64,000 nt of DNA from IMGVR_UViG_3300037264_008423:174437-238436, one strand, 5' to 3'. Shown: positions 15,733-37,376, counted from the first letter of the stretch. Notes: a model not told the origin generated them from the letters alone. Translations and numbers: made by a program.

Positions 15733-15859
15733 CGCAGGGAAGTAAAACGGCAAAAACCCGTGACCATCCCTTGTCCGGTAACGGGCCGACCGGAAACGGT
15801 TATCATACATCAACCTAAAGAGTTGAAATTAGGAGGTTCGACTCCTCCCCCTGCGACCA
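15733..15859 (+). ncRNA. tRNA-like RNA with large D-arm insertion bearing a Ro-type bulged helix
   Basis: CGCAGGG/CCCTGCG+ACCA, GGAGG-TTCGACT-CCTCC T arm, TCAAC-CTAAAGA-GTTGA arm; insert TTGTCCG-GTAA-CGGGC-C-GA. Confidence 0.65.
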
Positions 15860-15863
15860 TTTT

Positions 15864-15951
15864 GGAAGGTGACCGGATACACGAGGACCCTGGCCCGAAC
15901 CCAGGCGCGGTGAAATACCCGTCGTGAGTGGAAATCTCACACCTTCCGCCA
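15864..15951 (+). tRNA. tRNA-Ser(CGA), C33
   Basis: GGAAGGT/ACCTTCC, CCTGG-CCCGAAC-CCAGG, long variable arm. Confidence 0.85.
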
Positions 15952-15958
15952 TTTTAAC

Positions 15959-16032
15959 GGCCCGTTAGCTCAAAAATAGAGCACCCGGCTGATAACCGGG
16001 AGACGCCGGAGTGTTACCGGCATGGGCTACCA
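15959..16032 (+). tRNA. tRNA-Ile(GAT)
   Basis: CCCGG-CTGATAA-CCGGG arm, ACCA end. Confidence 0.88.
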
Positions 16033-16347
16033 TTTCATTCGGGGCCGATGAAAAGTGGGAAGTATGGACGTGGCAAAGATACCAGACCTGGGCGACCGGG
16101 CTGTTTTTCACGGCGCGCACGAGCATCTGATAGTGCTTCAGCACCCGATTTGGCTCACTTTCCGGCTGTATGCTGGTTGACTGCATACAGCCTAATATAT
16201 CAAATAAGAATTACCAATGCTATAGGGTCTTTACCCCATATTTTGGCTTAATTTGTGTTGATATTGACTTGGAACTATAAGTAAACATTTAAGCCTGGAT
16301 AGCTCAGAAGTAGAGCGCAGTCAGATTAACTGTTGTTTTAGTTCTAT

Positions 16348-16422
16348 AGCGCATTAGACTAACAGCAAGGTCGCCGGTCTTTCTAACCGGAAGCGCGGGG
16401 GCAGCACCCGCATGCGCTGCCA
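16348..16422 (+). tRNA. tRNA-Glu(TTC)
   Basis: AGCGCAT/ATGCGCT, CCGGT-CTTTCTA-ACCGG. Confidence 0.85.
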
Positions 16423-16425
16423 TTT

Positions 16426-16501
16426 GCCCCCGTAGCTCAGTCTATAGAGCGTCCGCCTCCGAAGCGGAAGGCCGCTGGTGAGATTCCAGCCGGGGGTACC
16501 A
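16426..16501 (+). tRNA. tRNA-Arg(CCG)
   Basis: TCCGC-CTCCGAA-GCGGA arm, ACCA end. Confidence 0.9.
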
Positions 16502-16573
16502 ATTTGAAACCCGCTAGGCGCGCTGTTTGGCGACCAGGGCCTTGGCTTTGTGATAGGCGGCCTGGCGGCACAG

Positions 16574-16774
16574 TCACTTAAGCTGAGGCATATGCTTGGT
16601 GTGCCCGGAAAAAGAGGCGTAGCAACTGGCTGCGGCGAGATTGGCGACCATGCTGGGAAAGAGGCTCCAGTTGAAAGCCTGACCCCGCATGCGGGGGTCC
16701 TGCAAATCCTGATACATGTGCTCGGCCCAGTGGATGCCCACTTCCTTAGCTTTGTCACGGTTGGTTCTTGCCAT
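16574..16774 (-). CDS. Small hypothetical protein
   Basis: MARTNRDKAKEVGIHWAEH...; fills the gap between tRNAs. Confidence 0.5.
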   Translation of the reverse strand: MARTNRDKAKEVGIHWAEHMYQDLQDPRMRGQAFNWSLFPSMVANLAAASCYASFSGHTKHMPQLK

Positions 16775-16793
16775 AAACTGTAGAACATTTTTC

Positions 16794-16869
16794 GCTCCCA
16801 AGGTGTAAGAATCTGCACGCTTCCCTGCGAAGGAAGAGGCTCGTGGTGTGAATCCACGTGGGAGCGCCA
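16794..16869 (+). tRNA. tRNA-Arg(GCG)
   Basis: GCTCCCA/TGGGAGC, CTTCC-CTGCGAA-GGAAG. Confidence 0.85.
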
Positions 16870-16875
16870 TTTTAC

Positions 16876-17004
16876 GGGGACGTAGCTTAATCTGGTAGAG
16901 CGCCAGGGTGAAAACCTGGAGGTGCGGGTTCAAATCCCGTTGTAATTACCCTCCTACAATCCTTGCCTGAAAGGGCCGAACTATGAGGATTATCGTCCCC
17001 GCCA
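16876..17004 (+). tRNA. tRNA-Phe(GAA) interrupted by a 53-nt structured insert between T arm and 3' acceptor strand
   Basis: 5' GGGGACG pairs with CGTCCCC-GCCA at 16994-17004; insert 16941-16993. Confidence 0.75.
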
Positions 17005-17015
17005 TTTAAAAAGCG

Positions 17016-17040
17016 CAGCCCCGAATCCGGTTCGGGGCTG
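17016..17040. terminator. GC-rich hairpin between convergent units
   Basis: CAGCCCCGAA-TCCGG-TTCGGGGCTG. Confidence 0.55.
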
Positions 17041-17108
17041 GCCTGGCTAACTATGATGACTGAATCGAACGACTATCGGCAACCGCGCAACTCACACGGT
17101 CCGCACCA

Positions 17109-17822
17109 TTAACTACCGGGCTTGAGGGCCACGACAAAGTGAACCTCGTTACGGAGCCTCGTTTCGCAGCCGAGCGCCGCCAGCAGATCCATGATGGGGC
17201 GCGTTTTTTCAGGCGGGACCACGGGATCGTAGCAGTTGAGCGTGGCATGGCGCAGGACAGTAAAACCCGCTTGGGTTAAAATGGCGCGCAGGTCATTGAT
17301 GGAAAGCTCGCGCACATGCATCTCGTAGGAAAAGGGACTGCCCCCGGCCATGACCCGCCAGAGCGTGTTGAGCGAGCTTAAGTTAGGCGTGGTCAGAAAC
17401 ATTTTTCCGCCCGGTTTGAGGCAGGCGTAGCAGGTGTTTACAAAATTTTTCAGGCCATCGCCCACGTAGGAGTCGCGGTGAAGCACGTCCTGGACCTCCA
17501 GGTCCTTGATATGCTCGATGACCTCCATGTTCAGCAGCAGGTCATAGTGGTTGGTCTTGTCGGTGAAGACGGTGCGCAGGTCCGTGCTGGTGTTTTCAAC
17601 CGGCAGGTCCGGGAAGAGCAACCGCAGTCCGTCCGTGAAGGCTCCGGGAGAGCCGACCTCCAAAACAGAGCTGGCCTCCGCTAACTCCTGCTCGATAAAA
17701 AGCATCGAGTTGACGTAACGCTGGCAGTGGGGAATGACCCAGGGGTTTCGGCTGTGAGGACTGTCGTGCGGCACGAACTCCAAAAAATATTTCTCAACTC
17801 TGGCTTTAAAGATTTCACCCAT
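17109..17822 (-). CDS. Class I SAM-dependent methyltransferase
   Basis: VLEVGSPG, YDLLLNMEVIEH, LKPGGKMFLTTPN; start placed at MGEIF to avoid the tRNA. Confidence 0.88.
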   Translation of the reverse strand: MGEIFKARVEKYFLEFVPHDSPHSRNPWVIPHCQRYVNSMLFIEQELAEASSVLEVGSPGAFTDGLRLLFPDLPVENTSTDLRTVFTDKTNHYDLLLNMEVIEHIKDLEVQDVLHRDSYVGDGLKNFVNTCYACLKPGGKMFLTTPNLSSLNTLWRVMAGGSPFSYEMHVRELSINDLRAILTQAGFTVLRHATLNCYDPVVPPEKTRPIMDLLAALGCETRLRNEVHFVVALKPGS

Positions 17823-17861
17823 ATGAAAGCCAGAACCAATTTTTAGTGTAAACAAATTTAA

Positions 17862-17938
17862 GGAAGCATAGCTCAATCACGAAGAGCGGGAGTCCTACCC
17901 ACTCAAGGTTGCTGGTGCGAGTCCGGCTGCTTCCACCA
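17862..17938 (+). tRNA. tRNA-Val(TAC), atypical anticodon loop
   Basis: GGAAGCA/TGCTTCC, loop CCTACCC (C33, C37). Confidence 0.7.
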
Positions 17939-17960
17939 TTTTGTTCCAGTAGCCGGGTAT

Positions 17961-18461
17961 ATGGATGGTATTAGTGATGAGAACATGGGCTATATAGTTA
18001 AACTGATGAAAAAATTAGCCAAGCTCATTAGCTGGCTGATCGAACTTGCTTTTCGGCGCGGATACCGTGAAGGCCGGAAGATCGGTAAACTTGGGTTCTG
18101 TTTTCGAGTGGGACCCGTAACCAATAAGAAACCTATGCCATTAGAATTAAAGCTAACAACGGAGCAGCAAGTCGCTGTGCGCATTAAGCCGACCACGCCT
18201 AAAGGCCAACCCGCCCAGTTGGACGGGCTTCCGGCCTGGTCTGTGGCGGTCGGAGACGTAACCCTGCAACCCAGCCAGGACGGCCTGTCTTGCGTGATTG
18301 TCAGCGCGGACACAGCGGGGTTGAGCCAGGTGCTTGTGACCGCCGACGCCGACCTGGGTGAGGGCGTGGAAACGGTCAGCGATACCATCGCGGTGGACGT
18401 GGCCAGCCCTCGCGCGACGAATTTGGGCCTGGCGGCGGACCCGCCCGAACTCAAGCCTTAA
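17961..18461 (+). CDS. Hypothetical protein, beta-rich (Ig-like) C-terminus
   Basis: Alternating beta-strand pattern from MPLELKL... Confidence 0.65.
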   Translation: MDGISDENMGYIVKLMKKLAKLISWLIELAFRRGYREGRKIGKLGFCFRVGPVTNKKPMPLELKLTTEQQVAVRIKPTTPKGQPAQLDGLPAWSVAVGDVTLQPSQDGLSCVIVSADTAGLSQVLVTADADLGEGVETVSDTIAVDVASPRATNLGLAADPPELKP

Positions 18462-18553
18462 GCGCCGCAGGGCGCAACTCCTTGATTGCAGCCCGGAAGT
18501 ATTCCGGGCTTTTTGTTCTTAGGGGTGGAATCCATAAACCAAAGGACACCCCT

Positions 18554-19153
18554 ATGACAGAGAATACTCTTGCTGGCAAGCTGGTCGCGCTGATCCGCGA
18601 AACCGAAGCTCCGGCTCACACGGAAACAGTCAAAGCCGTCATCCGGCTTTTGAAAGAGGCGGTGGTAATACTGGCCCCCAAAATCATCAATCCCACCCAG
18701 GACGATTTTAAGACCACCGCTGAAATCGCGGCGGCTACGGGGATCGACCTGTCTCCCTTGATTCAAACCACCGGGGACCGGAGTCAGATTAAGATAAAGA
18801 CCGATCTGCTCGACTATTTCACCACCAACGACTTCAAAGACGATCCGCAGCCTTTTGTCGTCTGTCTGCCCATGCCGGGATTTAACCCCTCGGTAGTTTA
18901 TCCTGGCCAGGAGGCGGCTCCCTACAATCCTGGTTATCCCATTCGGGACGGGGCCACACTTTGGCTGGATTCGCAGGAGCCAGTGGCCGCGCCGAACGCG
19001 ATTTGCTGCGAGATCTATCAGCCCAAAATGGGCGGCCTATTCATGTTTGTCCGGCCCTTTGCCACGCAGAACTCGCGGCGCGTGGGCTTCAAGTTTACCC
19101 TGAAAGGGAATGGCCGGAAAACCACCGTGGACATGGTGAGCGCCTACTCGTAA
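18554..19153 (+). CDS. Hypothetical protein
   Basis: ATG after AAGGA RBS. Confidence 0.7.
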   Translation: MTENTLAGKLVALIRETEAPAHTETVKAVIRLLKEAVVILAPKIINPTQDDFKTTAEIAAATGIDLSPLIQTTGDRSQIKIKTDLLDYFTTNDFKDDPQPFVVCLPMPGFNPSVVYPGQEAAPYNPGYPIRDGATLWLDSQEPVAAPNAICCEIYQPKMGGLFMFVRPFATQNSRRVGFKFTLKGNGRKTTVDMVSAYS

Positions 19154-19161
19154 ACAATTTC

Positions 19162-19237
19162 GCCTCGCACGCACAGACAGCGGTGCGCCGGTTTCGTAAA
19201 CCGGAGATGGCCGGTGCGATTCCGGCGCGAGGCTCCA
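19162..19237 (+). tRNA. tRNA-Thr(CGT)
   Basis: GCCTCGC/GCGAGGC, CCGGT-TTCGTAA-ACCGG. Confidence 0.88.
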
Positions 19238-19247
19238 GTCGTAGCAT

Positions 19248-19325
19248 GGTGCGTGTAGCATAATCAGTTAGTGCCCTTGATTGTGAATCAAGACTGTGCC
19301 GGTGCAACTCCGGTCACGCACCCCA
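19248..19325 (+). tRNA. tRNA-His(GTG)
   Basis: G-1:C73, CTTGA-TTGTGAA-TCAAG. Confidence 0.9.
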
Positions 19326-19851
19326 AAGTGACAGCGTAACCAGCGTGTTTTACGACTTTTAGGCACATAGCTACAAACTCATTGTAGCTAAAGTCAGCTT
19401 TGGCTTTGTTCACGGGTTTGCAGGTCAGTCCCAGGTTCAGAAGGGAGTTATCCCCTCCCTTCGATACGGGTATGGTATGGTCAAAAGCATAATCATCCGA
19501 AAGCAGGTCTATCGGAGTGCCCGTGAGGTAACACACTGGATCAGACTTGAGCTTATTCCAAAGCATTTTAGCTGTGAACCGGCTTGACAGCTTGCTGCGC
19601 CGCCCCTTGACTGCTCTGTCGAAATTCTTTTTTCTTTCTCTGAACCGGCTGAGCTTCACGGAAAATCTTTTCAGTTTACGGAACTTTTTCACGCGTATAA
19701 TGGTCTGGCTTTTGACTTGGTTGGACAAGTGATACCGGACTGTGCTCGGTGGTAATTTGGTTTCACGGCTGATTCTTTTCACGCCCCAGTCAGGGTGTTC
19801 GCGTTTGACTGTTTCTATTAATTTCTTATTTAATACACGGGTCGTATCCAT
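19288..19851 (-). CDS. HNH endonuclease with N-terminal HTH
   Basis: CYLTG...FDHTIPVSKGGDNSLLNL..TCKPVNKAK; AT-rich; overlaps tRNA-His antisense. Confidence 0.88.
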   Translation of the reverse strand: MDTTRVLNKKLIETVKREHPDWGVKRISRETKLPPSTVRYHLSNQVKSQTIIRVKKFRKLKRFSVKLSRFRERKKNFDRAVKGRRSKLSSRFTAKMLWNKLKSDPVCYLTGTPIDLLSDDYAFDHTIPVSKGGDNSLLNLGLTCKPVNKAKADFSYNEFVAMCLKVVKHAGYAVTLGCVTGVAPAQS

Positions 19852-19883
19852 ACCGTAAATACAGTTACGACCCGTAAGAACAT

Positions 19884-19959
19884 GTTCGGCGACCGAGCTA
19901 GTGACCGGAATGGTCTGCAAAACCAATGTTGTAGAGTGCGATCCTCTAGCCGAACTCCA
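19884..19959 (+). tRNA. tRNA-Cys(GCA)
   Basis: GTTCGGC/GCCGAAC, loop CTGCAAA, U73. Confidence 0.85.
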
Positions 19960-19982
19960 GTATTTAAAGCATGCGGGAAAGC

Positions 19983-20258
19983 ATGGCATCTTTGGCGTCT
20001 CAAATTGTCGCCTACCTTTTGGAGTATGAAGTGGTTCGAGTCTGCGCGTCTTGTGAACAGGAAATGGGGCGGCGCGTCAAGGTCGAGCCAGGTCAGCACC
20101 GCAGCCACGGCTATTGCAGGCGACATATGCTGGAATACTACCGGCAGGCAGATATTGATCCTGGTCCCGTAGCGGCTAAGGACGACCGGATGTTCTGCCC
20201 GGATCTGCGCGAGCACCCGGAAATACCCACCGTCCCGATGGAAAATAACGAGCTATGA
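19983..20258 (+). CDS. Small Zn-binding hypothetical protein
   Basis: CASC...SHGYC..H. Confidence 0.65.
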   Translation: MASLASQIVAYLLEYEVVRVCASCEQEMGRRVKVEPGQHRSHGYCRRHMLEYYRQADIDPGPVAAKDDRMFCPDLREHPEIPTVPMENNEL

Positions 20259-20483
20259 TCTACTACTGGCTTTTCCACCGGGCCAGCCGGAATCGGTGGG
20301 CGCTGTGGGCCTGGCGCAAATGGTCCAGCTTGATCACAGTTCACAAGCACGTGCGCCGGGGTAATTGGGCGCAGGCATGGATCTGGACAAGAAATTTAAC
20401 GCGGCATTATCCCAACAGCTAAGGAGTCTGCCTTCCAAGCAGAAAAAGTCGGGGCAGCCCACCATTTTTAGTTCTATGGGCGT

Positions 20484-21086: not shown

Positions 21087-21118
21087 GTCCTGTAAACTTA
21101 GGCAGGTGAGGGCGGCAC

Positions 21119-21403: not shown

Positions 21404-21406
21404 AAG

Positions 21407-26240: not shown

Positions 26241-26241
26241 A

Positions 26242-28774: not shown

Positions 28775-29204
28775 GGGGGCGTATTAGACTCGATCTAGTG
28801 CCCTGAACGCTTAGCGACAGCCGAGGATGGTGGTTGGACCTCGATAATACCTCCACCGAAAACATCAAATGCCGAAAGCACTGATGATACGGCTCTCTTA
28901 GCCCAAGCCGAAGCGATCTTCGCCGACCCGGATGAAGTCCTCGCCAAGACCGGCTATGCAGAGCCAGCTTTGGCCTAGCGCCAAACCGTCCACCCTCTGA
29001 CGCCTGCTACGGGGTGTGGGCGTAACCAGCAGGCAAAAACGCGGTCTCTTCCCGTGAACCGCGCCGTAGATCACGTGAGTGTGGCCGGGGTGATGTCTTG
29101 CCGTTCTCTTACCCGGTCATTCTAAATAAAGAAGCGGAGATGCCTGTGGATGCTCGCGCAAGGACTATTAGAGACAGGAGGGGCAGTGCCTCCTCGCCTC
29201 CACC
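28775..29204 (+). ncRNA. ssrA: tmRNA
   Basis: 5' GGGGGCGTATTAGACTCGA; 3' T arm plus CGCCTCC-ACCA with G3:U70; tag frame 28871-28978 after the CAAAT resume context. Confidence 0.92.
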
Positions 29205-29239
29205 AATTTCCGCCTCCACTGTTTACAGTTCTGTAATCC

Positions 29240-29854
29240 ATGAACGTGGCTCTGAACTGTAAACAGTGTGGTGATTCTTTCGAGATCCGAAAGGCCGAGC
29301 ATAACCGGCAGCTTAAAAAAGGCAGGCAGCACTTTTTCTGTAGCCTTTCCTGTTGCGCCGCTTATGGCAACACAGCAAGGATCGCACCAGTCATAAAGAA
29401 AAACTGTAAGCATTGCGGTGGAGAGTTTGAGACAAAACAGGATCGGCATGAAGCTGACTTTTGCGGTAAACGATGCGCTTCGCTGGGAAGCGTAACTGCG
29501 TATCGTCGAGCCAGAGCGAGGCTGTCGGGACAGGCGCATGCCAATAATTTTAGCAACGCTAAGGCGCTGCTTGGTAGAGAAAATAAGAAATATAGGCTGC
29601 TGATTCCTTTGCTGACCGAAAGACAGATTAGGTATGAGTTTGAAAAAAGGATCGATAAGTTTGTATTTGACTTGGCGCTCGAAGACCAGAGGGTTTTGAT
29701 CGAGTTTGACGGTCCAGAGCACCGCACGCCTAAAGGGACCGAGCGAGATGCGGTCAGGGACAGGTCCGCCGAGCTGCTGGGTTGGAAGGTTTTAAGGATA
29801 CCGGTGAAAACCGGTCAGATTATTCCAGCTTCCATGCTGGAAGCTGTTCTTTGA
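29240..29854 (+). CDS. DUF559/Vsr-like endonuclease with N-terminal Zn-binding repeats
   Basis: CKQC..FFCSLSC..CKHC; FVFDLALEDQRVLIEFDGPEH...RD...LGWKVLRI. Confidence 0.85.
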   Translation: MNVALNCKQCGDSFEIRKAEHNRQLKKGRQHFFCSLSCCAAYGNTARIAPVIKKNCKHCGGEFETKQDRHEADFCGKRCASLGSVTAYRRARARLSGQAHANNFSNAKALLGRENKKYRLLIPLLTERQIRYEFEKRIDKFVFDLALEDQRVLIEFDGPEHRTPKGTERDAVRDRSAELLGWKVLRIPVKTGQIIPASMLEAVL

Positions 29855-30098
29855 TAAATTTTGCGCCGGTCTGGCCAAGATCGTTCGTAGCGTTTGTGTA
29901 ACGGAACTTGTCTTTCATTCTCCAGACTGGCGCGATCTTTTTAATTTGACGGGTCGTTTGATGTCGGTTATCAGCACCAAAATCATAAGTTGGAAATTGT
30001 GGCGTAACAACCACCAGGGGCACCATCAGCTCACGCGCGTCGTGGTCTGAATTGCCCCTGAAGCTAAAATCAAAACGATGTCGCTTTTTATCCGTCAA
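29820..30098 (-). CDS. Hypothetical protein
   Basis: 92-aa ORF filling the gap. Confidence 0.45.
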   Translation of the reverse strand: MTDKKRHRFDFSFRGNSDHDARELMVPLVVVTPQFPTYDFGADNRHQTTRQIKKIAPVWRMKDKFRYTNATNDLGQTGAKFIKEQLPAWKLE

Positions 30099-30106
30099 AA
30101 CTTTTT

Positions 30107-30268
30107 AGCGCGCGAACCGCGCGGGTCGAATGTGATTGGTTACCATCAAACCGTTGGTTATTGGTGCAAATCCAATCCGGTCCGCAAGGGCCGGTAGCTC
30201 AATCAGCAGAGCAGCGGTTCCCGTAAGGGATTTCCGATCCTGAGCCTTACCCGTGCGGTTCGCGCGCT
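30107..30268 (+). ncRNA. yrlA: YrlA-type Y RNA (circularly permuted tRNA-like domain plus Ro60-binding stem)
   Basis: 19-bp terminal stem; GTCGAATG with bulged C opposite TTACC; T arm, GCAA-closed acceptor, D arm; about 0.8 kb from Ro60. Confidence 0.88.
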
Positions 30269-30891: not shown

Positions 30892-30985
30892 GCCACGAGC
30901 CGAACAGGACCGCGCCCTTGAGTGAGGGGGCTGTCGATGTTTCATGGCGCGCTTCCCGCGCCGTCCAACTTGCTCGTTGCCGTTA
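30892..30985 (+). ncRNA. Second Y RNA candidate (non-tRNA-like)
   Basis: ACGAGC-C-GA pairs with TT-GCTCGT; followed by terminator and Ro60. Confidence 0.7.
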
Positions 30986-30992: not shown

Positions 30993-31015
30993 AGGCCGCA
31001 CGCAGCGGCCTTTTT
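30993..31015 (+). terminator. Rho-independent terminator after the Y RNA candidate
   Basis: AGGCCGC-ACGCA-GCGGCCT then TTTT. Confidence 0.6.
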
Positions 31016-31058
31016 GCTGCCACATGGTTGGGGGCAGACTGCGCTGAAAGGAAAAACC

Positions 31059-32708
31059 ATGAGTGTTTACCAGACGGTTAGCCGTAAGGCAACCCCGCAA
31101 AATCAACCCATTCCCGGTTCCAAGCAGGTGAAGAACTCCGCAGGTGGTTACACCTGGCTCCTGGATGACTGGAGCCGCCTGCGCCGATTCCTGGTGCTTG
31201 GCTCCCAGGGTGGAACGTATTACGTCAAGGAACAGGATCTCGTCAAGGCCAACGCGGAAGTGGTTGACCGGTGCTTGGGTCTTGACGCGGCCAGGACGAT
31301 TCAGCAAATCGTGGAAGTTTCGGATAAGGGCCTGGCCTATCGCAACGAGGCGGCGCTCTTCGCGCTGGCCAAGGCCGCCGCCGACCAGAATGAAAAGTCA
31401 CGAGCGTTGGCTCTTGACGCGCTGCCGCAAGTGGCGCGCACCGGCACCCACCTGTTTCACTGGGCAAACTATGTTCAGTCGATGCGGGGCTGGGGCCGCG
31501 CCCTGAGAAAGGCGGTCGGGCACTGGTATAACCAGTGGACGGCGGACGAGCTGGCCTACCAGGTCGTCAAGTATCAGCAGCGCGATGGCTGGTCCCACCG
31601 GGACCTGCTCCGCCTGGCGCACCCGGTCGCCGAGACCGAGGGGCACGACGCGGTATTCCGCTGGGTCCTGGGCGGCCAGGAGGCCCTGGCGGCGCGCACG
31701 GTGAAGCGCCAGCGTCCCGGTCAAGAGGTAAAGCCTGAATACACCTACCCGGATCTGGCTTTCCACCTGCCGCAGTTCATCGAGATCTTTGAAAAGGCCA
31801 AGACGGCGGACGCCAAGACGCTTGTCAAGCTGATCACCGAGCGCAGCCTGCCCCGCGAGGCGATCCCCACGGAGCAGTTGAACTGCCCGGAGGTTTGGGA
31901 GGCGCTCTTAGTCAACATGCCAGCCACGGCCCTGGTCCGCAACCTGGGCAAGATGACCAGCATCGGGCTGGTCAAGACGCTTTCCAAGGCGTCCAAGACC
32001 ATTGTGGACAAGCTGGGTAACGCCGCGTGGCTCAAGAAGTCCCGCGTCCACCCGATGCAGTTTTTGATCGCGGCCAAGGTGTATGCCCAGGGTCACGGGG
32101 AAAAGGGCAAGCTCGCCTGGACGCCGGATCAGTCGGTGGTCTCGGCCCTGGAGCGCGCCTTCTACGCCTCTTTTGGCAACGTCAAGCCCATCGGCAACAA
32201 CGTGCTGATCTCGCTGGATATCTCCAGTTCGATGGGACATACGATGGAAGGCACCTGCTTGTCCTGCTACGAGGCGGAAGCGGCCCTGGCGCTAATCCAT
32301 GTCAGCATTGAGGACACCGTGGGGGTCATGGGTTTCGCCACAAACTACCGGGAAATCAAGATCCGCAAGGGCATGAGCCTGGTGGACGCGATGCAGCACG
32401 TCGCCGGTCAGGGCTTCGGCGGCACGGACTGCTCGCTGCCGTTTCGCTGGGCGGGAACGGAGCGGATGGATGTGAACTCATTTATCACGGTCACGGACAA
32501 TGAATCATGGCACGGCGGTGTTCACCCGTCCCAGGCGCTCAACGCCTATCGCCAGGCTTCCGGCAATCAGGCCCGGTCGGTCGTCATGGGCATGACGAGC
32601 ACGGGCTTTACTATCGCGGACCCCAATGACGCGGGTTCGCTCGACGTGGTGGGCTTTGACGCCTCCGCGCCTGCGCTCATCTCGGATTTCTGCCGGGGTG
32701 ATGTCTAA
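31059..32708 (+). CDS. rsr: Ro60/TROVE ribonucleoprotein (Rsr)
   Basis: NSAGGY..LRRFLVLGSQGGTYY; ARTGTHLF; KYQQRDGWSHRDLLRLAHP; vWA DISSSM, GGTDCSLP, TDNESW, VVGFD. Confidence 0.97.
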   Translation: MSVYQTVSRKATPQNQPIPGSKQVKNSAGGYTWLLDDWSRLRRFLVLGSQGGTYYVKEQDLVKANAEVVDRCLGLDAARTIQQIVEVSDKGLAYRNEAALFALAKAAADQNEKSRALALDALPQVARTGTHLFHWANYVQSMRGWGRALRKAVGHWYNQWTADELAYQVVKYQQRDGWSHRDLLRLAHPVAETEGHDAVFRWVLGGQEALAARTVKRQRPGQEVKPEYTYPDLAFHLPQFIEIFEKAKTADAKTLVKLITERSLPREAIPTEQLNCPEVWEALLVNMPATALVRNLGKMTSIGLVKTLSKASKTIVDKLGNAAWLKKSRVHPMQFLIAAKVYAQGHGEKGKLAWTPDQSVVSALERAFYASFGNVKPIGNNVLISLDISSSMGHTMEGTCLSCYEAEAALALIHVSIEDTVGVMGFATNYREIKIRKGMSLVDAMQHVAGQGFGGTDCSLPFRWAGTERMDVNSFITVTDNESWHGGVHPSQALNAYRQASGNQARSVVMGMTSTGFTIADPNDAGSLDVVGFDASAPALISDFCRGDV

Positions 32709-33285
32709 TTCACGGAACCGCGCCCTGGGTGACCGGGACGCGGTTCTACTCTTTACTATGGGTGCTAATCGTCACTGTGTGATTGACTGTTTCGAGTTTG
32801 AGCCAGATAGCAATATCGTGGAAATTGGAACCGATCAGGGCGGGGGTTCCACTCGATTTTTGGCGGACTACGCGCGAGCGCGCCGTTTGAATTTTTGGAC
32901 CGTGGACATCAATCCCCAGCGCATTGATCAGGCCGCCCGGCTGGGCTGCCACGCGGTTTGCGCCAAGGGGGAGGATTTTCTGATCGACTTTGGCAGGCCG
33001 ATTCACTTTGCCTATCTGGACAATCTGGACTGGATGGGCGGCGGCATGGAGGTCCCCGCCAACGTGGCCAGCGCCCAGGCTCACCTGCTTCAAGCGCGGC
33101 GTTTGCTCCAATGGATGACAGCGGGGGTCATCGTCATTGATGATACCTGGCTTAGCCAGGGATTTGGCAAGGGTTATTACGCCGCTCAATTTCTGGCTGA
33201 TTCCGGTTTTACGGTGGAATCGGGACCCGGCTGGCTGGTCCTGGTTCGGAGCATGGCCGCTGGCCGCCGTCTATCGGAAAAGTAA
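32701..33285 (+). CDS. Class I SAM-dependent methyltransferase
   Basis: IVEIGT..GGGST..WTVDIN..FAYLD..VIVIDD; start overlaps Ro60 stop. Confidence 0.82.
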   Translation: MSNSRNRALGDRDAVLLFTMGANRHCVIDCFEFEPDSNIVEIGTDQGGGSTRFLADYARARRLNFWTVDINPQRIDQAARLGCHAVCAKGEDFLIDFGRPIHFAYLDNLDWMGGGMEVPANVASAQAHLLQARRLLQWMTAGVIVIDDTWLSQGFGKGYYAAQFLADSGFTVESGPGWLVLVRSMAAGRRLSEK

Positions 33286-33297
33286 TCGCTTTCAATT

Positions 33298-33486
33298 ATG
33301 GCCTACCTCAATAAGATTGTAAACGGACACCGGGTTCGAGTGAAGTTGCTCAGTCCCGCCGCCTTGCGGAAGCTGAAAAAAGAAGAACTGGAGTTGGTGC
33401 GAGAGATGTCCGGTCTCGCCGATGAATTGATCGCCGAAAGGCGCACGGAAAGCAAACCGGTCAAGCGTGCCGGGACTGTCCGCTAA
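33298..33486 (+). CDS. Small basic hypothetical protein
   Basis: 62-aa ORF ending inside tRNA-Ser(GCT). Confidence 0.5.
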   Translation: MAYLNKIVNGHRVRVKLLSPAALRKLKKEELELVREMSGLADELIAERRTESKPVKRAGTVR

Positions 33487-33537
33487 ACAGCTCGCCCCTT
33501 CACTGCGGGTGTGGTGCAAGTCCACTGCTTTCCGCCA
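33447..33537 (+). tRNA. tRNA-Ser(GCT), C33
   Basis: GGAAAGC/GCTTTCC-GCCA, CTGT-CCGCTAA-ACAG, long variable arm. Confidence 0.8.
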
Positions 33538-33543
33538 TTTTAT

Positions 33544-33635
33544 GGCCCCTTGGTGTAACAGTAACACGACCGTCTTATACACGGGAAGTCCTAGATGTGG
33601 GCACGATGCTGGTGCAAATCCGGCAGGGGCTACCA
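33544..33635 (+). tRNA. tRNA-Ile(TAT) with long variable region
   Basis: GGCCCCT/AGGGGCT-ACCA, loop CTTATAC, about 22-nt variable region. Confidence 0.75.
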
Positions 33636-33644
33636 CTATTTAGA

Positions 33645-34682
33645 CTATTGGTTTACAGGCACTTGAGCTACGCTCATTGTGGTTTTGACTTGGGATTTGT
33701 AGATCTGTCTCGAAACACCACTGAGACGATACAGATCCCATAGCGCAGTGCTAATAGCCTTGGCAGTGGGGCGATCCAGTTTGCTGTTATCACTTTTTTT
33801 CCATTCAGGCCGACTTGCCACGTATTGGTGGATGATCTCCACAACATGCGCCATGTGGTTCAGAGTGAGCTGATCGAGCCACCGCTCAAAACTTTCACGA
33901 GGATTTTGCGCGGCTTCTTTACCAAAGAAGAAGTCCCACACCCAAGCCATGCAGATGTTTATTTGACGACTGCCATGCTTATACTTGTTCTCGTAGGCCC
34001 GGTTGATGCAATTGGTAAGATCTTCGGCCCAATCCAGGTAGCGGGTAAGCGTGGGAGACTCCAGCCTCTTCAAGAATTTACCACGGTATTCGTAGTCCAC
34101 GATTTGCCAGTCGTTAAAACCGTGGCTACTAAGCCACGTGAGTATCTCGTAACCGCTAAAATGCCTGGCGCGCGCAAAGCCAGCGGCCACGGTGCTTGCC
34201 AGCGTGCAGATGACACTGGATCTGTGGAGTCCCTTAACCAGATTTTTAGCGTTGGATTCGTTAATTTGAGTATTAATGGGTTGGCTCAGATCAAGGCTAA
34301 CCGTGCTTGCATTTCTCAGTGTTACGGAGGTAAGTTGCGAGATCGGAGGATTAGGGCTAGGGGCCTGAACGCGCACTTCAACTTGTTGGACGCGCACTTC
34401 AGCTTGTTGCGAGGATTTCTGTGTGCCCTCTCTGTAACCTTGAACAAAGCCTTCATGAAAGCCTTTAGTATAGCCCGTCTTTTTTCCATTTCGCTCGCCC
34501 ACGGTCTTACCGTAATCGAAGCCCTCCTCCCAGGCTACGTGAACCTGCTGGTTCGTTATTGTATTAATGATCAGCGCGTTCCTGTTGACGCTTTCAATGC
34601 CCTTCTCTAGTTTTTGAAAAGCTTCATCAGGCTCTTTGGTTTGCGGTGGGGGTTCGTTTTTGAGATTTAATTCAGCATTCAT
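33645..34682 (-). CDS. Hypothetical protein with GxxxG repeat segment
   Basis: EEGFDYG..VGE.NG..TGYTKGFHEGFVQGYREG; AT-rich. Confidence 0.75.
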   Translation of the reverse strand: MNAELNLKNEPPPQTKEPDEAFQKLEKGIESVNRNALIINTITNQQVHVAWEEGFDYGKTVGERNGKKTGYTKGFHEGFVQGYREGTQKSSQQAEVRVQQVEVRVQAPSPNPPISQLTSVTLRNASTVSLDLSQPINTQINESNAKNLVKGLHRSSVICTLASTVAAGFARARHFSGYEILTWLSSHGFNDWQIVDYEYRGKFLKRLESPTLTRYLDWAEDLTNCINRAYENKYKHGSRQINICMAWVWDFFFGKEAAQNPRESFERWLDQLTLNHMAHVVEIIHQYVASRPEWKKSDNSKLDRPTAKAISTALWDLYRLSGVSRQIYKSQVKTTMSVAQVPVNQ

Positions 34683-34716
34683 AGTTTCATTTAGAACGAA
34701 AAAAGTTCTATGGGTC

Positions 34717-35334
34717 ATGATTCGTCAAAGCAGCATCGACGCTTACCGTGAAGCTCAGGAGAGCGGCCTGGTCGCCCAGTGCCAGATCCTTGTGCTGGAA
34801 ACCGTGTTCAACCACCATCCGGTTACGGCCAATGAAGTTTTAGACATCCTCTACCAGCAGAACCAGCGTGTGTCTCAAAACACCATCAACACGCGCTTCA
34901 GCGAGTTGGAGGGCATGGGTTTGATCAAGACGGTGGAGCGCAAGCAGGACAAGGTGACTGGCAAGCTCAATAACGCCTGGGTGCCCTGCCCGGAGTTCAG
35001 TGACGAGCAGATTCAGGCTTACAAGCAGGCGCGCCAGCAGGCCGTCAAAGAGAGGCAATCCAACGTGGCGCGCCTGGAGGCGGAGTGCGCCAACCTGCGC
35101 GCCGAGGTTCAACGTTTAAGCCGCCACGCTACGGTGAGCACCGCTTTCACACCGGTCGCCGCCCCCGCCGCTGGCGCTCAGCGGTATGAGCTTTACGCCA
35201 AAGACAAGCCGGGCATGACCGTCAGCAGCCTGGAGCGCGCCAAATCGGAAAAGATGATGCTTTTCTACTGCGAGGCTTTTCAGGTCCCGATGATCCAGGT
35301 TAAGATCAGAAAATTAGCGGTTATCCCGGAATAA
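34717..35334 (+). CDS. Winged HTH DNA-binding protein
   Basis: TANEV...SQNTINTRFSELEGMGLIK; coiled coil. Confidence 0.75.
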   Translation: MIRQSSIDAYREAQESGLVAQCQILVLETVFNHHPVTANEVLDILYQQNQRVSQNTINTRFSELEGMGLIKTVERKQDKVTGKLNNAWVPCPEFSDEQIQAYKQARQQAVKERQSNVARLEAECANLRAEVQRLSRHATVSTAFTPVAAPAAGAQRYELYAKDKPGMTVSSLERAKSEKMMLFYCEAFQVPMIQVKIRKLAVIPE

Positions 35335-35345
35335 ACAGGCACCCT

Positions 35346-35651
35346 ATGACACATCCTATCATTGAGGCTTTTCGGATCGAACAATGCACGATGGGCGGCT
35401 CGGCGTTTCTGCCCACGGTTTACCTGGACAAGGCGGTTGCGACCAGCATCGCCCAAAGTAAAAACGAGGAATTTGTTGACTATAAAGTCAGGCCAGTGCG
35501 CGTGAGGCGCTTTGGAAAAACCGAGTGCGTGGCGGTTGAGAATATTTTAACCCTGGACGAAACGACCGAGCCGGAGCATGCGCGCCGGAACGCTTTAAAG
35601 AAACTGACTCCCTCGGACCGGAAGGCGCTGGGGTTAACCCCTTTAAAATAA
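35346..35651 (+). CDS. Hypothetical protein
   Basis: 101 aa; ALKKLTPSDRKALGL C-terminus typical of phage small proteins. Confidence 0.65.
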   Translation: MTHPIIEAFRIEQCTMGGSAFLPTVYLDKAVATSIAQSKNEEFVDYKVRPVRVRRFGKTECVAVENILTLDETTEPEHARRNALKKLTPSDRKALGLTPLK

Positions 35652-35660
35652 AAACGAGCT

Positions 35661-35993
35661 ATGTATGGTTTTTCCGATTCCTGGCACACGCTGGTCATTG
35701 ACTTTGGCGCGGAAGAGCGCCTTCAGCGCGCCGCGCAGGAGCAGACGATTGGCACGGAGATCGTAACGCTTACCGTTGACGGTTTCAGACAGCGTTACAT
35801 CGAAGAGAGCGACCTTCATTTTTTAGAAAACGATCCCCGCTGGCAGAGACTCAAAGCGGTGTTTAGGCCGGGGGACGTGCTAGTCAAGTTTAATAGCAGC
35901 GAGGCGAGCTGGGCAGCGTTAGCCGGACGCGCTGGATACGCGGTTGTGCGCGACGGCCAAGCGGTGGATAGTTACTTGACTCGGTTATCTTAG
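35661..35993 (+). CDS. Hypothetical protein
   Basis: 110 aa; WAALAGRAGYAVVRDG. Confidence 0.65.
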   Translation: MYGFSDSWHTLVIDFGAEERLQRAAQEQTIGTEIVTLTVDGFRQRYIEESDLHFLENDPRWQRLKAVFRPGDVLVKFNSSEASWAALAGRAGYAVVRDGQAVDSYLTRLS

Positions 35994-36076
35994 GGCGCGT
36001 GGTTTACCCGGAACAGCAGACGGGCCTGGTCGAGAACCAGTGAGCCTTGGAAGTGCAATTCTTCTCGCGCCCACCA
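35993..36076 (+). tRNA. tRNA-Leu(GAG), non-canonical core, C33
   Basis: GGGCGCG/CGCGCCC, loop TCGAGAA. Confidence 0.82.
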
Positions 36077-36083
36077 TTTTTAA

Positions 36084-36159
36084 GCTGACGTAACTCAATT
36101 GGCAGAGTAACGGACTTTTAATCCGTAAGTTACGGGATCGTGGCCCGTCGTCAGCACCA
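36084..36159 (+). tRNA. tRNA-Lys(TTT)
   Basis: ACGGA-CTTTTAA-TCCGT arm, ACCA end. Confidence 0.9.
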
Positions 36160-36166
36160 ATTTTAC

Positions 36167-36240
36167 AGCCCAGTAGCACAATGCGGTGCGGCTCCCTTTG
36201 AAGGAGACGGATGGGGGTGCGAATCCCTCCTGGGCTACCA
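36167..36240 (+). tRNA. tRNA-Gln(TTG)
   Basis: AGCCCAG/CTGGGCT, loop CTTTGAA. Confidence 0.85.
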
Positions 36241-36261
36241 TTTTTAAGCTAAAAATAAAAA

Positions 36262-36304
36262 GTTTACTTTTTATTTTGACAGCCAGGTCACTTTCTTTTA
36301 AGTT
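36262..36304 (+). promoter_or_regulatory. Sigma70-type promoter with upstream GTTTAC box
   Basis: GTTTAC-N8-TTGACA-N17-TAAGTT. Confidence 0.7.
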
Positions 36305-36334
36305 CTGGCTCAACGAACAGAAAGACAAAAACCA

Positions 36335-37099
36335 GTGAAACCAAAACTACATGAACTCCTGGCGGCGGAGACGAACCTGGACAACCAGGCGAATAAGTGC
36401 CGCACTGACTTGGTGGACACCCTGACCAAGAAACGGCACCACTTTGAGGAAAAAAAGACGGTGTTTATCCCGAATACGGAAGGCGCGACGCCGATGGTGG
36501 AAGCGCAGTCCGACATCGTGACCACCGTGCGCAAGGAGCTGGACTGGATCAAGGGCCATCTCACCAAAGCTTTGGACGCCGCGTTCCAGATTGCGGAGAC
36601 CAACATGGTCGCGCGCGGCGACGTGGTGATCGATGATGACGCGGCGACGGTTCTGCTCACGGGGATTCCAGCCACGGCGCTCCTGGAACTGGAAAAGCGC
36701 GCCGTTGAGATCAAGCAGCTAGTCGAGGCGATCCCCACGCTGGACCCCGCCAAAGGTTTCCAGTCCGACGAACAGCGGGGCGATGGATTCTTCAAGGCCA
36801 GGGACGTGGCGAAAACGCGCACCAAGAAAGAGAAGAAAGTCATCGTGCTCCACGCGCCGACCAAAGAGCATCCGGCCCAGGTGCAGTTGATCGATGTGGA
36901 TGTGCCGGTGGGCGCTTTGCAGGAGCAGGAATGGTCCAGCCTGATCACCACCGCCCAAAAAGCGGACATGCTGGATCGGGCAGAGAAAGTGGTTCGCGCG
37001 CTCAAGAAAGCGCGCTCGCGTGCCAATGACACGGAAGTGGACACGACCAAGAAGCTGGGCAACCGGCTGCTGAGCTACGTGTTTGATGGAAAAGTGTAA
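36335..37099 (+). CDS. Conserved hypothetical coiled-coil protein
   Basis: KLHELLAAE...IPATALLELEKR...IPTLDP..HPAQV; GTG start. Confidence 0.85.
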   Translation: MKPKLHELLAAETNLDNQANKCRTDLVDTLTKKRHHFEEKKTVFIPNTEGATPMVEAQSDIVTTVRKELDWIKGHLTKALDAAFQIAETNMVARGDVVIDDDAATVLLTGIPATALLELEKRAVEIKQLVEAIPTLDPAKGFQSDEQRGDGFFKARDVAKTRTKKEKKVIVLHAPTKEHPAQVQLIDVDVPVGALQEQEWSSLITTAQKADMLDRAEKVVRALKKARSRANDTEVDTTKKLGNRLLSYVFDGKV

Positions 37100-37210
37100 A
37101 CAATTTCGGGTGTGGAAAGCGGCCTCCGGGTTGCTTTCCTAGCTCAAAGCTCAAGGTGAAGCTCAGATTCAGGGTTACAGGTCAGGCTATCACCCGAAGG
37201 CTCAAAACCC

Positions 37211-37376
37211 TAAGCGAAAGGAACGTTGAAAGGTAGCGCCACTCCAACTGAGGTCGGGGGTTCAAATCCCTCCTCCGCCCCCAAAATCATATGGCGGAGT
37301 AGCTCAGCGGTAGAGCATCAGGATCAGGCTAACGGCGCTAAGCGTTTTGACGAACAGAGCTAAAAAGCTTCGCTTA
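37211..37376 (+). ncRNA. Second YrlA-like circularly permuted tRNA-like RNA
   Basis: T arm, then CTCCGCC-loop-GGCGGAG acceptor, then D arm; closed by CTGA/TCAG, TAGCGCC/GGCGCTA, TAAGCGAA/TTCGCTTA. Confidence 0.75.

What the first reader, a model, noticed from the sequence alone, without database searches (positions are those of the whole stretch)
15733..37376. Phage Ro60 with a family of up to five Y-RNA-like RNAs, including tRNA/Y-RNA chimeras
Seen: a full Ro60 gene (31059-32708). Four RNAs carry the same helix, N-C-[bulged C]-G-A paired to U-U-G-N (15771-15789, 16963-16979, 30123-30129 with 30247-30252, 30895-30903 with 30970-30977). A fifth permuted tRNA-like RNA lies at 37211-37376. Established: Ro60 binds a bulged-C helix (GUCCGA/UUGAC in vertebrate Y RNA; GNCGAA in bacteria), and YrlA RNAs are permuted tRNA mimics, some phage-encoded. 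Inference: this phage may use several Ro adaptors, two of which keep a normal tRNA order, anticodon arm and CCA end. These could tether Ro to synthetases, ribosomes or tRNA nucleases, or act as decoys for host anticodon nucleases. I do not recognise that architecture from described Y RNAs.
Basis: partly seen in the sequence, partly recalled or inferred. Interest (0 to 1): 0.92.

Follow-up and report, generated by a model that had tools for sequence, protein, structure and literature searches.

The report
Phage Ro60 with tRNA-shaped Y RNAs
An uncultivated giant phage encodes the ring-shaped RNA-binding protein Ro60 plus about seven partner "Y RNAs" scattered through its tRNA gene array, and two of them are tRNA-shaped molecules carrying a grafted Ro60-docking arm, a layout I found no description of and that recurs in other Ro60 phages.

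Summary
Ro60 (31059-32708) is intact. All four bulged-C helices and the permuted tRNA-like RNA sit at the stated coordinates. The bare helix pattern is not above chance. The fuller module is: capped lower stem with bulged C, upper stem, then UUAUC. A covariance model built only from phages outside this clade finds just two significant matches in the 64 kb window, c1 (44.7 bits) and c2 (34.7 bits).

- **c2** is a tRNA-Phe(GAA) cloverleaf with a Y-RNA arm inserted before the 3' acceptor strand. It is conserved with compensatory changes in three related phages.
- **c1** has an acceptor stem, ACCA end, anticodon arm and T arm, with the Y arm where the D arm would be. Analogous chimeras lie beside Ro60 in at least six other uncultivated phage lineages.
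- **c3** is YrlA-like and **c4** is YrlB-like.
- **c5** is a conserved permuted tRNA-like RNA without a Ro60 motif.

Best reading: a multi-Y-RNA Ro60 particle system in which c1 and c2 are YrlA-type tRNA mimics in true tRNA topology. Ro60 binding and function are untested. This is a new variant of a known kind.

The parts
31059..32708 (+). Ro60 (TROVE + vWA) gene
   Evidence: Pfam TROVE and vWA_Ro60. PDB Ro60/Rsr matches at 1e-104 to 1e-113. Homologues at 61-74% identity lie on syntenic 100-250 kb phage contigs.
Lower stem GACGGGC[C]GA (15600-15609) pairs with CUUGUCCGUC (15715-15724). Upper stem plus GGGUUAUC at 15612-15625 pairs with 15704-15710. The loop holds an anticodon-like arm (15625-15641) and a T arm (15646-15662).
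   Evidence: Read. The Rfam nematode stem-bulge RNA model aligns the lower stem, upper stem and GGGUUAUC. Homologues: L008 3400-3532 (nhmmer 6e-21) and L009 8044-8177. Family alignment.
15733..15859 (+). c1: tRNA-topology Y chimera. Acceptor 15733-15739 pairs with 15849-15855, followed by ACCA. Capped Y arm 15755-15804, with hairpin 15770-15789 (GUAA cap, bulged C) and UUAUC 15800-15804. Anticodon-like arm 15810-15826 (loop CUAAAGA). T arm 15832-15848. No D arm.
   Evidence: Model R1 42.1 bits, E=4e-8. Model R2 44.7 bits, E=2e-9. Partial Rfam tRNA hit of 17.2 bits over the anticodon and T arms.
16876..17004 (+). c2: tRNA-Phe(GAA) cloverleaf with a Y arm. Acceptor 16876-16882 pairs with 16994-17000, followed by GCCA. 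D arm 16885-16901. Anticodon arm 16903-16919. T arm 16924-16940. Capped Y arm 16947-16994, with hairpin 16962-16979 (GAAA cap, bulged C) and UUAUC 16990-16994.
   Evidence: Rfam tRNA core 52.5 bits at 16876-16948. R1 36.3 bits and R2 34.7 bits. Homologues: L008 4586-4716, L093 610-740 and a mini form at L009 11064-11156.
It has a lower stem, an upper stem and GGUUAUC (29960-29972). In the window the CGA of the motif reads CGU.
   Evidence: Six-sequence alignment with 13 compensatory pairs. Coordinates.
30108..30267 (+). c3: YrlA-like RNA. Long closing stem with GGGU[C]GAAUG, matching GNCGAAN0-1G. GGUUACC, T arm 30160-30176, GCAA-capped acceptor-like stem 30177-30194, D arm 30195-30213.
   Evidence: Rfam YrlA hit of 33.5 bits over model positions 23-85. 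Seven-sequence alignment with 15 compensatory pairs, including U-A to C-G next to the bulged C.
30894..30979 (+). c4: short YrlB-like Y RNA immediately upstream of Ro60. CGAGC[C]GAA pairs with CUUGCUCG. A terminator-like hairpin follows at 30993-31015.
   Evidence: Six-sequence alignment with 10 compensatory pairs. The pair next to the bulge is C-G in the window and U-A in relatives. Coordinates.
37211..37376 (+). c5: permuted tRNA-like RNA. T arm 37256-37273, capped acceptor-like stem 37274-37298, D arm 37299-37317. There is no bulged-C helix; the outer helix UAAGCGAA/UUCGCUUA is fully paired.
   Evidence: Rfam YrlA hit of 36.6 bits over model positions 1-114, below the gathering score of 69. 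Three-sequence alignment with 16 compensatory pairs.
28775..29205 (+). tmRNA gene in the same RNA array (context only)
   Evidence: Rfam RF00023 at 55.2 bits, above its gathering score of 47. The position is syntenic in relatives.

Best explanation
The window holds a phage-encoded Ro60 ribonucleoprotein system with a set of Y RNAs embedded in the phage's tRNA/tmRNA array. They are probably co-transcribed with the tRNAs and matured by the same enzymes.

c0 and c7 are canonical stem-bulge Y RNAs. c3 is YrlA-type and c4 is YrlB-type.

c1 and c2 carry the whole Ro60-docking stem as a closed arm on a tRNA-shaped body that has its own acceptor stem and encoded CCA end. That stem comprises a lower helix with a bulged C, an internal loop, an upper helix and the UUAUC motif.

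In effect c1 and c2 are YrlA-type tRNA mimics written in true tRNA topology. In YrlA the Ro stem holds the RNA ends and the acceptor-like stem is capped. Here the acceptor is open and the Ro stem is capped.

Inferred working: RNase P and 3' processing release the chimeras from the array. Ro60 binds the capped arm through the conserved G-N-C-[C]-G-A strand. The tRNA-shaped part then engages tRNA-binding proteins. In this way Ro60, and any nuclease it recruits, is coupled to tRNA metabolism or surveillance during infection.

Shown here: sequence anatomy, conservation, covariation and genomic linkage to Ro60. Inferred: Ro60 binding, processing and the downstream partner.
For: - **Ro60 is intact**.
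- **The motif is known.** GNCGAAN0-1G is the proposed Ro60 site of bacterial Y RNAs, and YrlA has the order motif-V-T-AS-D (PMC4201824). A phage Ro60 binds phage hairpins carrying CGAA in gel-shift assays (PMC12135203).
- **Strand and position bias.** The composite motif [CT]CGA-N5-10-G(G/A)UUA(U/C)C occurs 160 times on the Ro60 strand and 38 times on the other strand, over about 1.5 Mb of Ro60 phage loci. Most + hits read GGG(C/U)CGA..GGUUAUC and lie beside Ro60. The window has four: c0, c1, c2 and c3.
- **Independent covariance models.** R1 and R2 find only c1 and c2 in the window.
- **Structure of the capped arm.** 86.6% of cells are paired against 76% in shuffles. Eight of 12 pairs show compensatory change (0 of 500 shuffles reach this). 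The U-A and U-G pairs flanking the bulged C are invariant or nearly so.
- **c2 family.** All three full homologues have perfect 7-bp acceptors of differing sequence, a GAA anticodon and covarying stems. All sit directly after tRNA-Arg(gcg).
- **Chimeras elsewhere.** Examples with perfect acceptor stems and CCA-like tails lie next to Ro60 in L022, L051, L057/L059, L066, L172/L180 and L175.
- **Unbiased scan.** Of 11 stretches found in IMG/VR, 7 are on Ro60 contigs.
Against: - There are no expression, processing or binding data; all loci are metagenomic.
- c1 has no close homologue in the window's own clade.
- No Y-like RNA in the window reaches an Rfam gathering score.
- c5 lacks the motif, and c7 in the window has CGU in place of CGA.
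- Six cultured Ro60 phages examined have ordinary Y modules but no capped arm; the best score is 15.9 bits.
- Two micro-versions (L173, L174) show no Ro60 within the 9-13 kb fetched.
- Model E-values are rough because calibration was shortened.
Confidence: 0.7

Rival explanations
1. c2, and perhaps c1, are working decoder tRNAs. On this reading the extra arm has nothing to do with Ro60. It would be a processing or stability element, or a site for another phage protein.
For: - c2 keeps a full cloverleaf, a GAA anticodon and an encoded CCA end.
- No other tRNA-Phe is called in the window.
- The UUAUC motif has no assigned function.
Against: - The arm reproduces the entire Ro60-linked Y stem and is found almost only on Ro60 contigs.
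- L008 has a normal tRNA-Phe as well as the chimera.
- The L009 homologue has lost the D and anticodon arms but keeps the acceptor, T arm and Y arm, so decoding is dispensable.
- An arm at the T/acceptor junction lies on the acceptor/T helix that elongation factor Tu binds (own knowledge).
Confidence: 0.1
2. The capped arms act as Ro60 sponges or operators. They would titrate or regulate Ro60 rather than tether it, and the tRNA body would serve only as a stable, processable scaffold.
For: A capped bulged hairpin of the same kind sits directly 5' of the Ro60 ribosome-binding site in 21 of 82 phage loci, where about 1.3 are expected. This shows that the closed form of the site is used as a cis element in other phages.
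Against: - tRNA features are kept under selection: perfect acceptor stems with compensatory changes, T arms and CCA ends.
- That is more than a scaffold needs.
- The window has no operator-like hairpin upstream of its own Ro60.
Confidence: 0.1
3. c1 and c2 are evolutionary debris. They would be recombination or duplication junctions between tandem Y RNA genes and tRNA genes, in which the 3' strand of one Y RNA meets the 5' strand of the next, and would have no function of their own.
For: - c1 starts 4 nt after c0, and its arm reads like c0's 3' strand, a tetraloop, then c0's 5' strand.
- Junctions of tandem Y RNAs give weak model hits of 23-34 bits.
- c1 has no close homologue.
Against: - Tetraloop caps leave no room for two separate RNA ends.
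- c2 is conserved across phages whose Ro60 proteins are only 63-74% identical to the window's, with compensatory changes.
- The same design recurs in several unrelated lineages.
- In c1 the acceptor (7 of 7 pairs), T arm and anticodon arm are all intact.
Confidence: 0.07

Closest known systems
YrlA (bacterial and mycobacteriophage Y RNA; Rfam RF02553; Chen et al. 2014, PMC4201824)
   Same: - Both have the Ro60-site motif GNCGAA near a closing stem.
- Both have a tRNA-like domain with T and D arms.
- Both are encoded near Ro60 on the same strand.
- c3 matches this layout.
- The L051/L022-type chimeras have the same elements in the same cyclic order.
   Different: - In YrlA the RNA ends lie in the Ro stem and the acceptor-like stem is capped.
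- In c1 and c2 the Ro stem is capped, and the ends lie in a real acceptor stem with an encoded CCA.
- c2 also keeps a complete anticodon arm and places the Y arm at the T/acceptor junction.
- None of these RNAs reaches the Rfam gathering score.
M. smegmatis YrlA after RNase P cleavage and CCA addition (Chen et al. 2014)
   Same: Processing produces a Ro60-bound RNA with a tRNA-like acceptor end carrying CCA.
   Different: In M. smegmatis that end is made by cutting the capped stem of a permuted RNA, which nicks the molecule. In c1 and c2 the tRNA topology is encoded directly in one continuous chain.
D. radiodurans Yrn1 and eukaryotic Y / nematode stem-bulge RNAs (Rfam RF01656)
   Same: - All have a lower stem with a bulged C, an upper stem, and GGGUUAUC opening the loop.
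- Yrn1 also has an anticodon-like arm and a T arm in non-permuted order.
- c0 and c7 fit this layout.
- From my own memory, human Y1 and Y4 carry a similar GUUAUC motif a few bases after CCGA.
   Different: - c0 scores only 15.5 bits against a gathering score of 38, because its loop holds tRNA-like arms.
- Yrn1 and the eukaryotic Y RNAs have no acceptor stem or CCA end separate from the Ro stem.
Thermus phage phiLo Yrl1 and Yrl2 (PMC12135203)
   Same: These are phage-encoded Y-like RNAs upstream of a phage Ro60. They are hairpins with a CGAA motif that bind Ro60 in gel-shift assays.
   Different: No tRNA scaffold, acceptor stem or CCA end is reported for them. The phiLo Ro60 is only distantly related to the window's (E=1.8e-11 over part of the protein).

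Membership tests
Ro60 / TROVE protein | TROVE (HEAT-repeat ring) domain followed by a vWA domain, full length | tested here: met
   PF05731 at 2.5e-47 and PF25045 at 2.2e-53. Residues 13-544 align to 1yvp and 12-549 to 2nvo.
YrlA (RF02553) | Score at or above the Rfam gathering threshold (69 bits) | tested here: not met
   c3 scores 33.5 bits over model positions 23-85. c5 scores 36.6 bits. c6 scores 27.8 bits.
YrlA (RF02553) | GNCGAAN0-1G motif near the 5' end | tested here: met
   c3 reads GUCGAAUG at 30125-30132, and this is conserved in all seven homologues. The motif is not met by c5.
YrlA (RF02553) | Permuted tRNA-like domain in the order T arm, capped acceptor-like stem, D arm | tested here: met
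   c3 and c5 show this order, supported by covariation. c1 and c2 do not: they have tRNA order with an open acceptor stem.
YrlA (RF02553) | Encoded within about 4 kb of Ro60 on the same strand | tested here: met
   c3 ends about 0.8 kb upstream of Ro60, and c4 ends 80 nt upstream. c5 starts about 4.5 kb downstream. c1 and c2 lie 14-15 kb upstream in the same + strand array.
Y RNA (any kind) | Physically bound by Ro60 | not testable with these tools
   Needs gel-shift, pull-down or RNA immunoprecipitation. Only genomic linkage and motif identity were shown here.
Canonical Y / stem-bulge RNA | Lower stem with bulged C, upper stem, then a UUAUC-initiated loop | tested here: met
   c0 and c7 meet it. 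The Rfam threshold is not reached: c0 scores 15.5 bits against 38, while the short Y RNAs of L012 score 37.4 against 38.
tRNA (RF00005) | Cloverleaf above the gathering score with a contiguous acceptor stem | tested here: inconclusive
   The c2 core scores 52.5 bits (gathering score 29), but its true 3' acceptor strand is displaced by 53 nt and ARAGORN does not call it. c1 scores 17.2 bits and has no D arm.
tRNA (function) | Aminoacylation and use in decoding | not testable with these tools
   The mini homologue in L009, which lacks D and anticodon arms, argues that decoding is not the conserved function.
Capped-Y-arm tRNA-topology RNAs (class defined here) | Matches a covariance model of upper 3' strand, lower 3' strand, cap, lower 5' strand with [C]GA, upper 5' strand and UUAUC, where the model was trained without the sequence tested | tested here: met
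   R2, trained only outside the window's clade, gives c1 44.7 bits, c2 34.7, L093 42.9 and L009 32.1. R1 gives c1 42.1 and c2 36.3, with the next window hit at 11.5.
Capped-Y-arm tRNA-topology RNAs (class defined here) | Arm enclosed by a 7-bp acceptor stem with an NCCA-like tail, and co-occurrence with Ro60 | tested here: met
   Perfect acceptor stems occur in the window (c1, c2), L008, L093, L022, L051, L057 and L066. Seven of 11 IMG/VR pattern hits are on Ro60 contigs.

The most novel reading that the evidence does not exclude
The tRNA-topology Y RNAs are true substrates of the tRNA machinery: RNase P, the CCA-adding enzyme, and for c2 perhaps PheRS. They would use that identity in one of two ways. 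Either they deliver Ro60 and a bound exonuclease to ribosomes or to tRNA repair and decay enzymes, or they serve as Ro60-guarded decoys for host anticodon nucleases that attack the phage's large tRNA set. They would then also be living intermediates showing how Y RNAs arose from tRNAs.
Probability: 0.12. Interest if true: 0.9.

Novelty: new variant of a known kind. Interest (0 to 1): 0.7.

Why it matters
Why Ro60's partner RNAs mimic tRNA remains an open question in the papers consulted here. These chimeras make that link explicit. The same Ro60-docking stem is grafted at two different points onto molecules that keep a real acceptor end, a CCA tail and, in c2, a Phe anticodon.

This yields specific testable predictions: processing by RNase P, CCA maintenance, charging, and partners that depend on the tRNA part.

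It also shows that searches with the permuted YrlA model miss a whole topology. And it shows that Ro60 phages often carry many Y RNAs, up to about eight, which changes how such loci and their 'odd tRNAs' should be annotated.

Tried and rejected
- **Bare helix pattern.** N-C-[C]-G-A paired to U-U-G-N as a statistic gave 76 + strand against 62 - strand hits in the window. Five loose capped hairpins were found against 1.9 in shuffles. This is not evidence on its own.
- **Rfam at gathering thresholds.** It returned only tRNAs and tmRNA, with no Y family.
- **DNA-level search of cultured phages.** No match.
- **Single-protein search of IMG/VR.** It found only the window's own contig. Close relatives had to be fetched from other assemblies, and one of them (P0004) returned no DNA.
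- **c6 (14365-14520) as a sixth Y RNA.** Rejected: it has a T arm only and no Y motif.
- **c5 as a Ro60 partner.** Not supported: the motif is not conserved.
- **c1 homologues in the window's clade.** None found.
- **Capped arms in six cultured Ro60 phages** (Rizal, Comrade, Quaran19, Boopy, Atu_ph07, Tribute). None found. Phosso also gave none (L001).
- **Two review papers** (PMC10870794, PMC6047535). Not held in the library.
- **RNA-repair genes next to the array.** None seen among the ORFs scanned.
- **My regular-expression parse of the D, anticodon and T arms.** It mis-registered those arms. Only its acceptor and Y-hairpin lines are used here. The cloverleaf rests.

Full report
**Setting**

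The window is part of a 238 kb IMG/VR viral contig. Its + strand carries a long RNA gene array. ARAGORN tRNAs and Rfam adds five more. A tmRNA lies at 28775-29205. A family A DNA polymerase and an NAD-dependent DNA ligase lie upstream. No cultured phage matches at the DNA level.

The ORF 31059-32708 is a complete Ro60. It has the TROVE and vWA_Ro60 domains and full-length similarity to Xenopus Ro60 and Deinococcus Rsr structures. Ro60 is annotated in 365 cultured phage records, all below 60% identity.

A clade of Ro60 proteins 61-74% identical sits on 100-250 kb contigs. These share the synteny tRNA array, tmRNA, Y RNAs, Ro60, DUF7873. These relatives (L003/L009, L004, L005/L008, L006/L092, L007/L010, L093) are the basis of the comparative work.

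**Checking the observation**

The bare helix they describe is too short to mean anything alone. A scan for it finds 76 matches on the + strand and 62 on the - strand.

What is significant is a longer shared module. It consists of a lower stem with the bulged C, an internal loop, an upper stem, and the motif UUAUC 5-10 nt after CGA. The composite [CT]CGA-N5-10-G(G/A)UUA(U/C)C occurs 160 times on the Ro60 strand and 38 times on the other strand, across about 1.5 Mb of Ro60 phage loci. Most + strand hits read GGG(C/U)CGA..GGUUAUC and cluster beside Ro60. The window has four such hits: c0, c1, c2 and c3.

The Rfam model of nematode stem-bulge RNAs, which are Y RNA homologues, has the same consensus (UCGGUCCG..UGGGUUAUC..CUUGACCG). 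It aligns to c0. It nearly reaches threshold on two short Y RNAs that follow the Ro60 gene of another phage, scoring 37.4 against 38 bits.

**The two chimeras**

*c2 (16876-17004)* is a tRNA-Phe(GAA) cloverleaf.
- Rfam scores its core at 52.5 bits.
- Its 3' acceptor strand is displaced by a 53-nt insert between the T stem and that strand.
- The insert is a closed Y arm: upper-stem 3' strand, CUUGCCU, GAAA cap, GGGC[C]GA, upper-stem 5' strand, UUAUC. The acceptor 3' strand and GCCA follow.
- Homologues in L008 and L093 have the same design and the same place, directly after tRNA-Arg(gcg).
- Their acceptor stems (GGGGACG, GCGAGCG, GGGGAUG) each pair perfectly with their own 3' strand. The anticodon, T and Y stems covary, and the anticodon is GAA in all three.
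- In L009 the homologue has lost the D and anticodon arms but keeps the acceptor, T arm, Y arm and ACCA. What is conserved is therefore the acceptor/T/Y-arm part, not decoding.
- L008 also has an ordinary tRNA-Phe.

*c1 (15733-15859)* has a perfect 7-bp acceptor stem with ACCA, a T arm, and a 5-bp anticodon-like arm with a 7-nt loop. Its Y arm is capped by GUAA and sits where the D arm would be. It starts 4 nt after c0.

**Objective membership test**

I built a covariance model of the capped arm from 12 sequences, none from the window (R1).
- Searching the whole window on both strands with filters off returns c1 (42.1 bits, E=4e-8) and c2 (36.3 bits, E=1e-6). The next hit scores 11.5 bits.
- A second model used only phages outside the window's clade (R2). 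It gives c1 44.7 bits, c2 34.7, L093 42.9 and the L009 mini form 32.1.
- On the unfitted MAFFT alignment, 86.6% of cells pair against 76% in shuffles. Eight of 12 pairs show compensatory change (0 of 500 shuffles reach this). Slid controls fall to 31-54%.
- The U-A pair flanking the bulged C is invariant (12 of 12) and the U-G pair nearly so (11 of 12). That pattern is expected for a protein contact site.

**The class outside this clade**

Chimeras with the same arm, a perfect acceptor stem and a CCA-like tail lie within about 1 kb of Ro60, on its strand, in several phages. These are L022, L051, L057/L059, L066, L172/L180 (two in tandem) and L175. L040 has a capped arm 91 nt after Ro60.

In these phages the Y arm sits between the D arm and a short anticodon-like arm. 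L051 and L057 differ by compensatory changes in the acceptor, upper, lower and T stems. The cyclic order is Ro strand, UUAUC, V/anticodon-like arm, T arm, acceptor, D arm, Ro strand. This is the order Chen et al. give for YrlA. The chimeras are therefore YrlA in tRNA topology.

An unbiased pattern scan of all 2.9 million IMG/VR contigs gave 11 stretches:
- seven are on Ro60 contigs;
- two are micro-versions (5-bp acceptor-like stem, Y arm, then UUAUC and the 3' strand of that stem; L174 ends in G-CCA, L173 in GCCUA) with no Ro60 in the 9-13 kb fetched;
- two look like chance hits in coding sequence.

Six cultured Ro60 phages have ordinary Y modules but no capped arm.

**The other RNAs in the window**

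| RNA | Coordinates | Kind | Key evidence |
|---|---|---|---|
| c0 | 15598-15728 | Canonical Y RNA with tRNA-like arms in its loop; layout resembles Deinococcus Yrn1 | |
| c7 | 29945-30099 | Canonical Y RNA; CGA reads CGU in the window | 13 compensatory pairs |
| c3 | 30108-30267 | YrlA-like, with GUCGAAUG | 15 compensatory pairs, including U-A to C-G beside the bulged C |
| c4 | 30894-30979 | Short YrlB-like Y RNA just upstream of Ro60, with its own terminator-like hairpin | 10 compensatory pairs |
| c5 | 37211-37376 | Permuted tRNA-like RNA, well supported, but motif neither bulged nor conserved | 16 compensatory pairs |

Because the motif in c5 is neither bulged nor conserved, Ro60 binding by c5 is doubtful.

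**How it most likely works**

Established from the literature:
- Ro60 binds the bulged helix mainly through the 5' strand.
- Bacterial Y RNAs tether Ro60 to PNPase.
- YrlA mimics tRNA.
- M. smegmatis YrlA is cut by RNase P and receives CCA (PMC4201824).
- A phage Ro60 binds CGAA hairpins and forms complexes with host PNPase (PMC12135203).

Inferred for this window:
- The array is transcribed with the tRNAs.
- RNase P and 3' processing free c1 and c2.
- Ro60 docks on the capped arm.
- The tRNA-shaped body recruits tRNA-binding proteins, coupling Ro60 to tRNA surveillance, repair or decay during infection.

I put 0.7 on this general model. The specific partner remains open.

**Rivals**

The rivals are a Ro60-independent tRNA arm, a sponge or operator role, and evolutionary debris. 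Each is weakened by the Ro60 linkage, the retention of tRNA features under compensatory change, and the L009 mini form.

**Novelty and limits**

Phage Ro60, phage YrlA and multiple Y RNAs per genome are already known. A Ro-stem-capped, acceptor-open topology with encoded CCA, at two different graft points, was not found in any paper I could search. Two reviews were not available.

Everything here is in silico and rests on metagenomic contigs. Model E-values are rough. c1 rests on analogues, not orthologues.

Noticed in passing
L014 9927-9950; L022 732-753; L057 9979-9999; 21 of 82 phage Ro60 loci (not in the window): A capped bulged hairpin (UUG-stem-loop-stem-C[C]GAA) sits directly 5' of the Shine-Dalgarno sequence or start codon of Ro60. 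About 1.3 such loci are expected by chance. The stems covary between phages. It looks like an operator for translational autoregulation of Ro60.
   Followed up: partly
L050 9158-9885; L090 9087-9659 and 17626-17868; L040 11726-12308; L041, L057, L058: Many uncultivated Ro60 phages carry arrays of four to eight tandem Y modules (GGGCCGAAG..GGUUAUC) beside Ro60. This is far more than the one or two reported for studied systems.
   Followed up: partly
window 15863-15954: An 8-bp acceptor-like stem (GGAAGGUG/CACCUUCC) followed by GCCA encloses three hairpins. Neither ARAGORN nor Rfam calls it a tRNA, and it has no Y motif.
   Followed up: no
window 16294-16423: A divergent tRNA-Glu(UUC)-like gene lies at 16347-16423, with acceptor AGCGCAU/AUGCGCU, GCCA, and an unusual T loop. 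A 5' half-tRNA remnant precedes it at 16294-16345. Both escape the tRNA finders.
   Followed up: no
window 14365-14520: A structured RNA with a T arm lies between tRNA-Arg(tct) and tRNA-Arg(cct). It gives a weak YrlA hit of 27.8 bits and has no Y motif. In L009 the same slot (6772-6911) holds a Y module.
   Followed up: partly
L184 (Gordonia phage Boopy) 8567-8634 and 8753-8841: Two features annotated as tRNA-Ile and tRNA-Leu overlap Y modules (..GGGCCGAAG..GGUUACC and ..CGGCCGAUUGAG..GGUUAUC). They are probably YrlA-type RNAs annotated as tRNAs.
   Followed up: no
window 33544-33635: tRNA-Ile(tat) is 92 nt long and has a long extra arm. The same form occurs in L004 at 12738-12829.
   Followed up: no
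window 29240-29854: An HNH/DUF559-type endonuclease ORF sits between the tmRNA and c7. It is present only in the window and is absent from that slot in relatives, as expected for a homing element.
   Followed up: no
L173 6968-7037; L174 7894-7963; L177 4377-4468: Micro-versions of the c2 design consist of a 5-8 bp acceptor-like stem closed around a capped Y arm with UUAUC. L174 and L177 end in N-CCA; L173 ends in GCCUA. They have no T, D or anticodon arms.
   Followed up: partly
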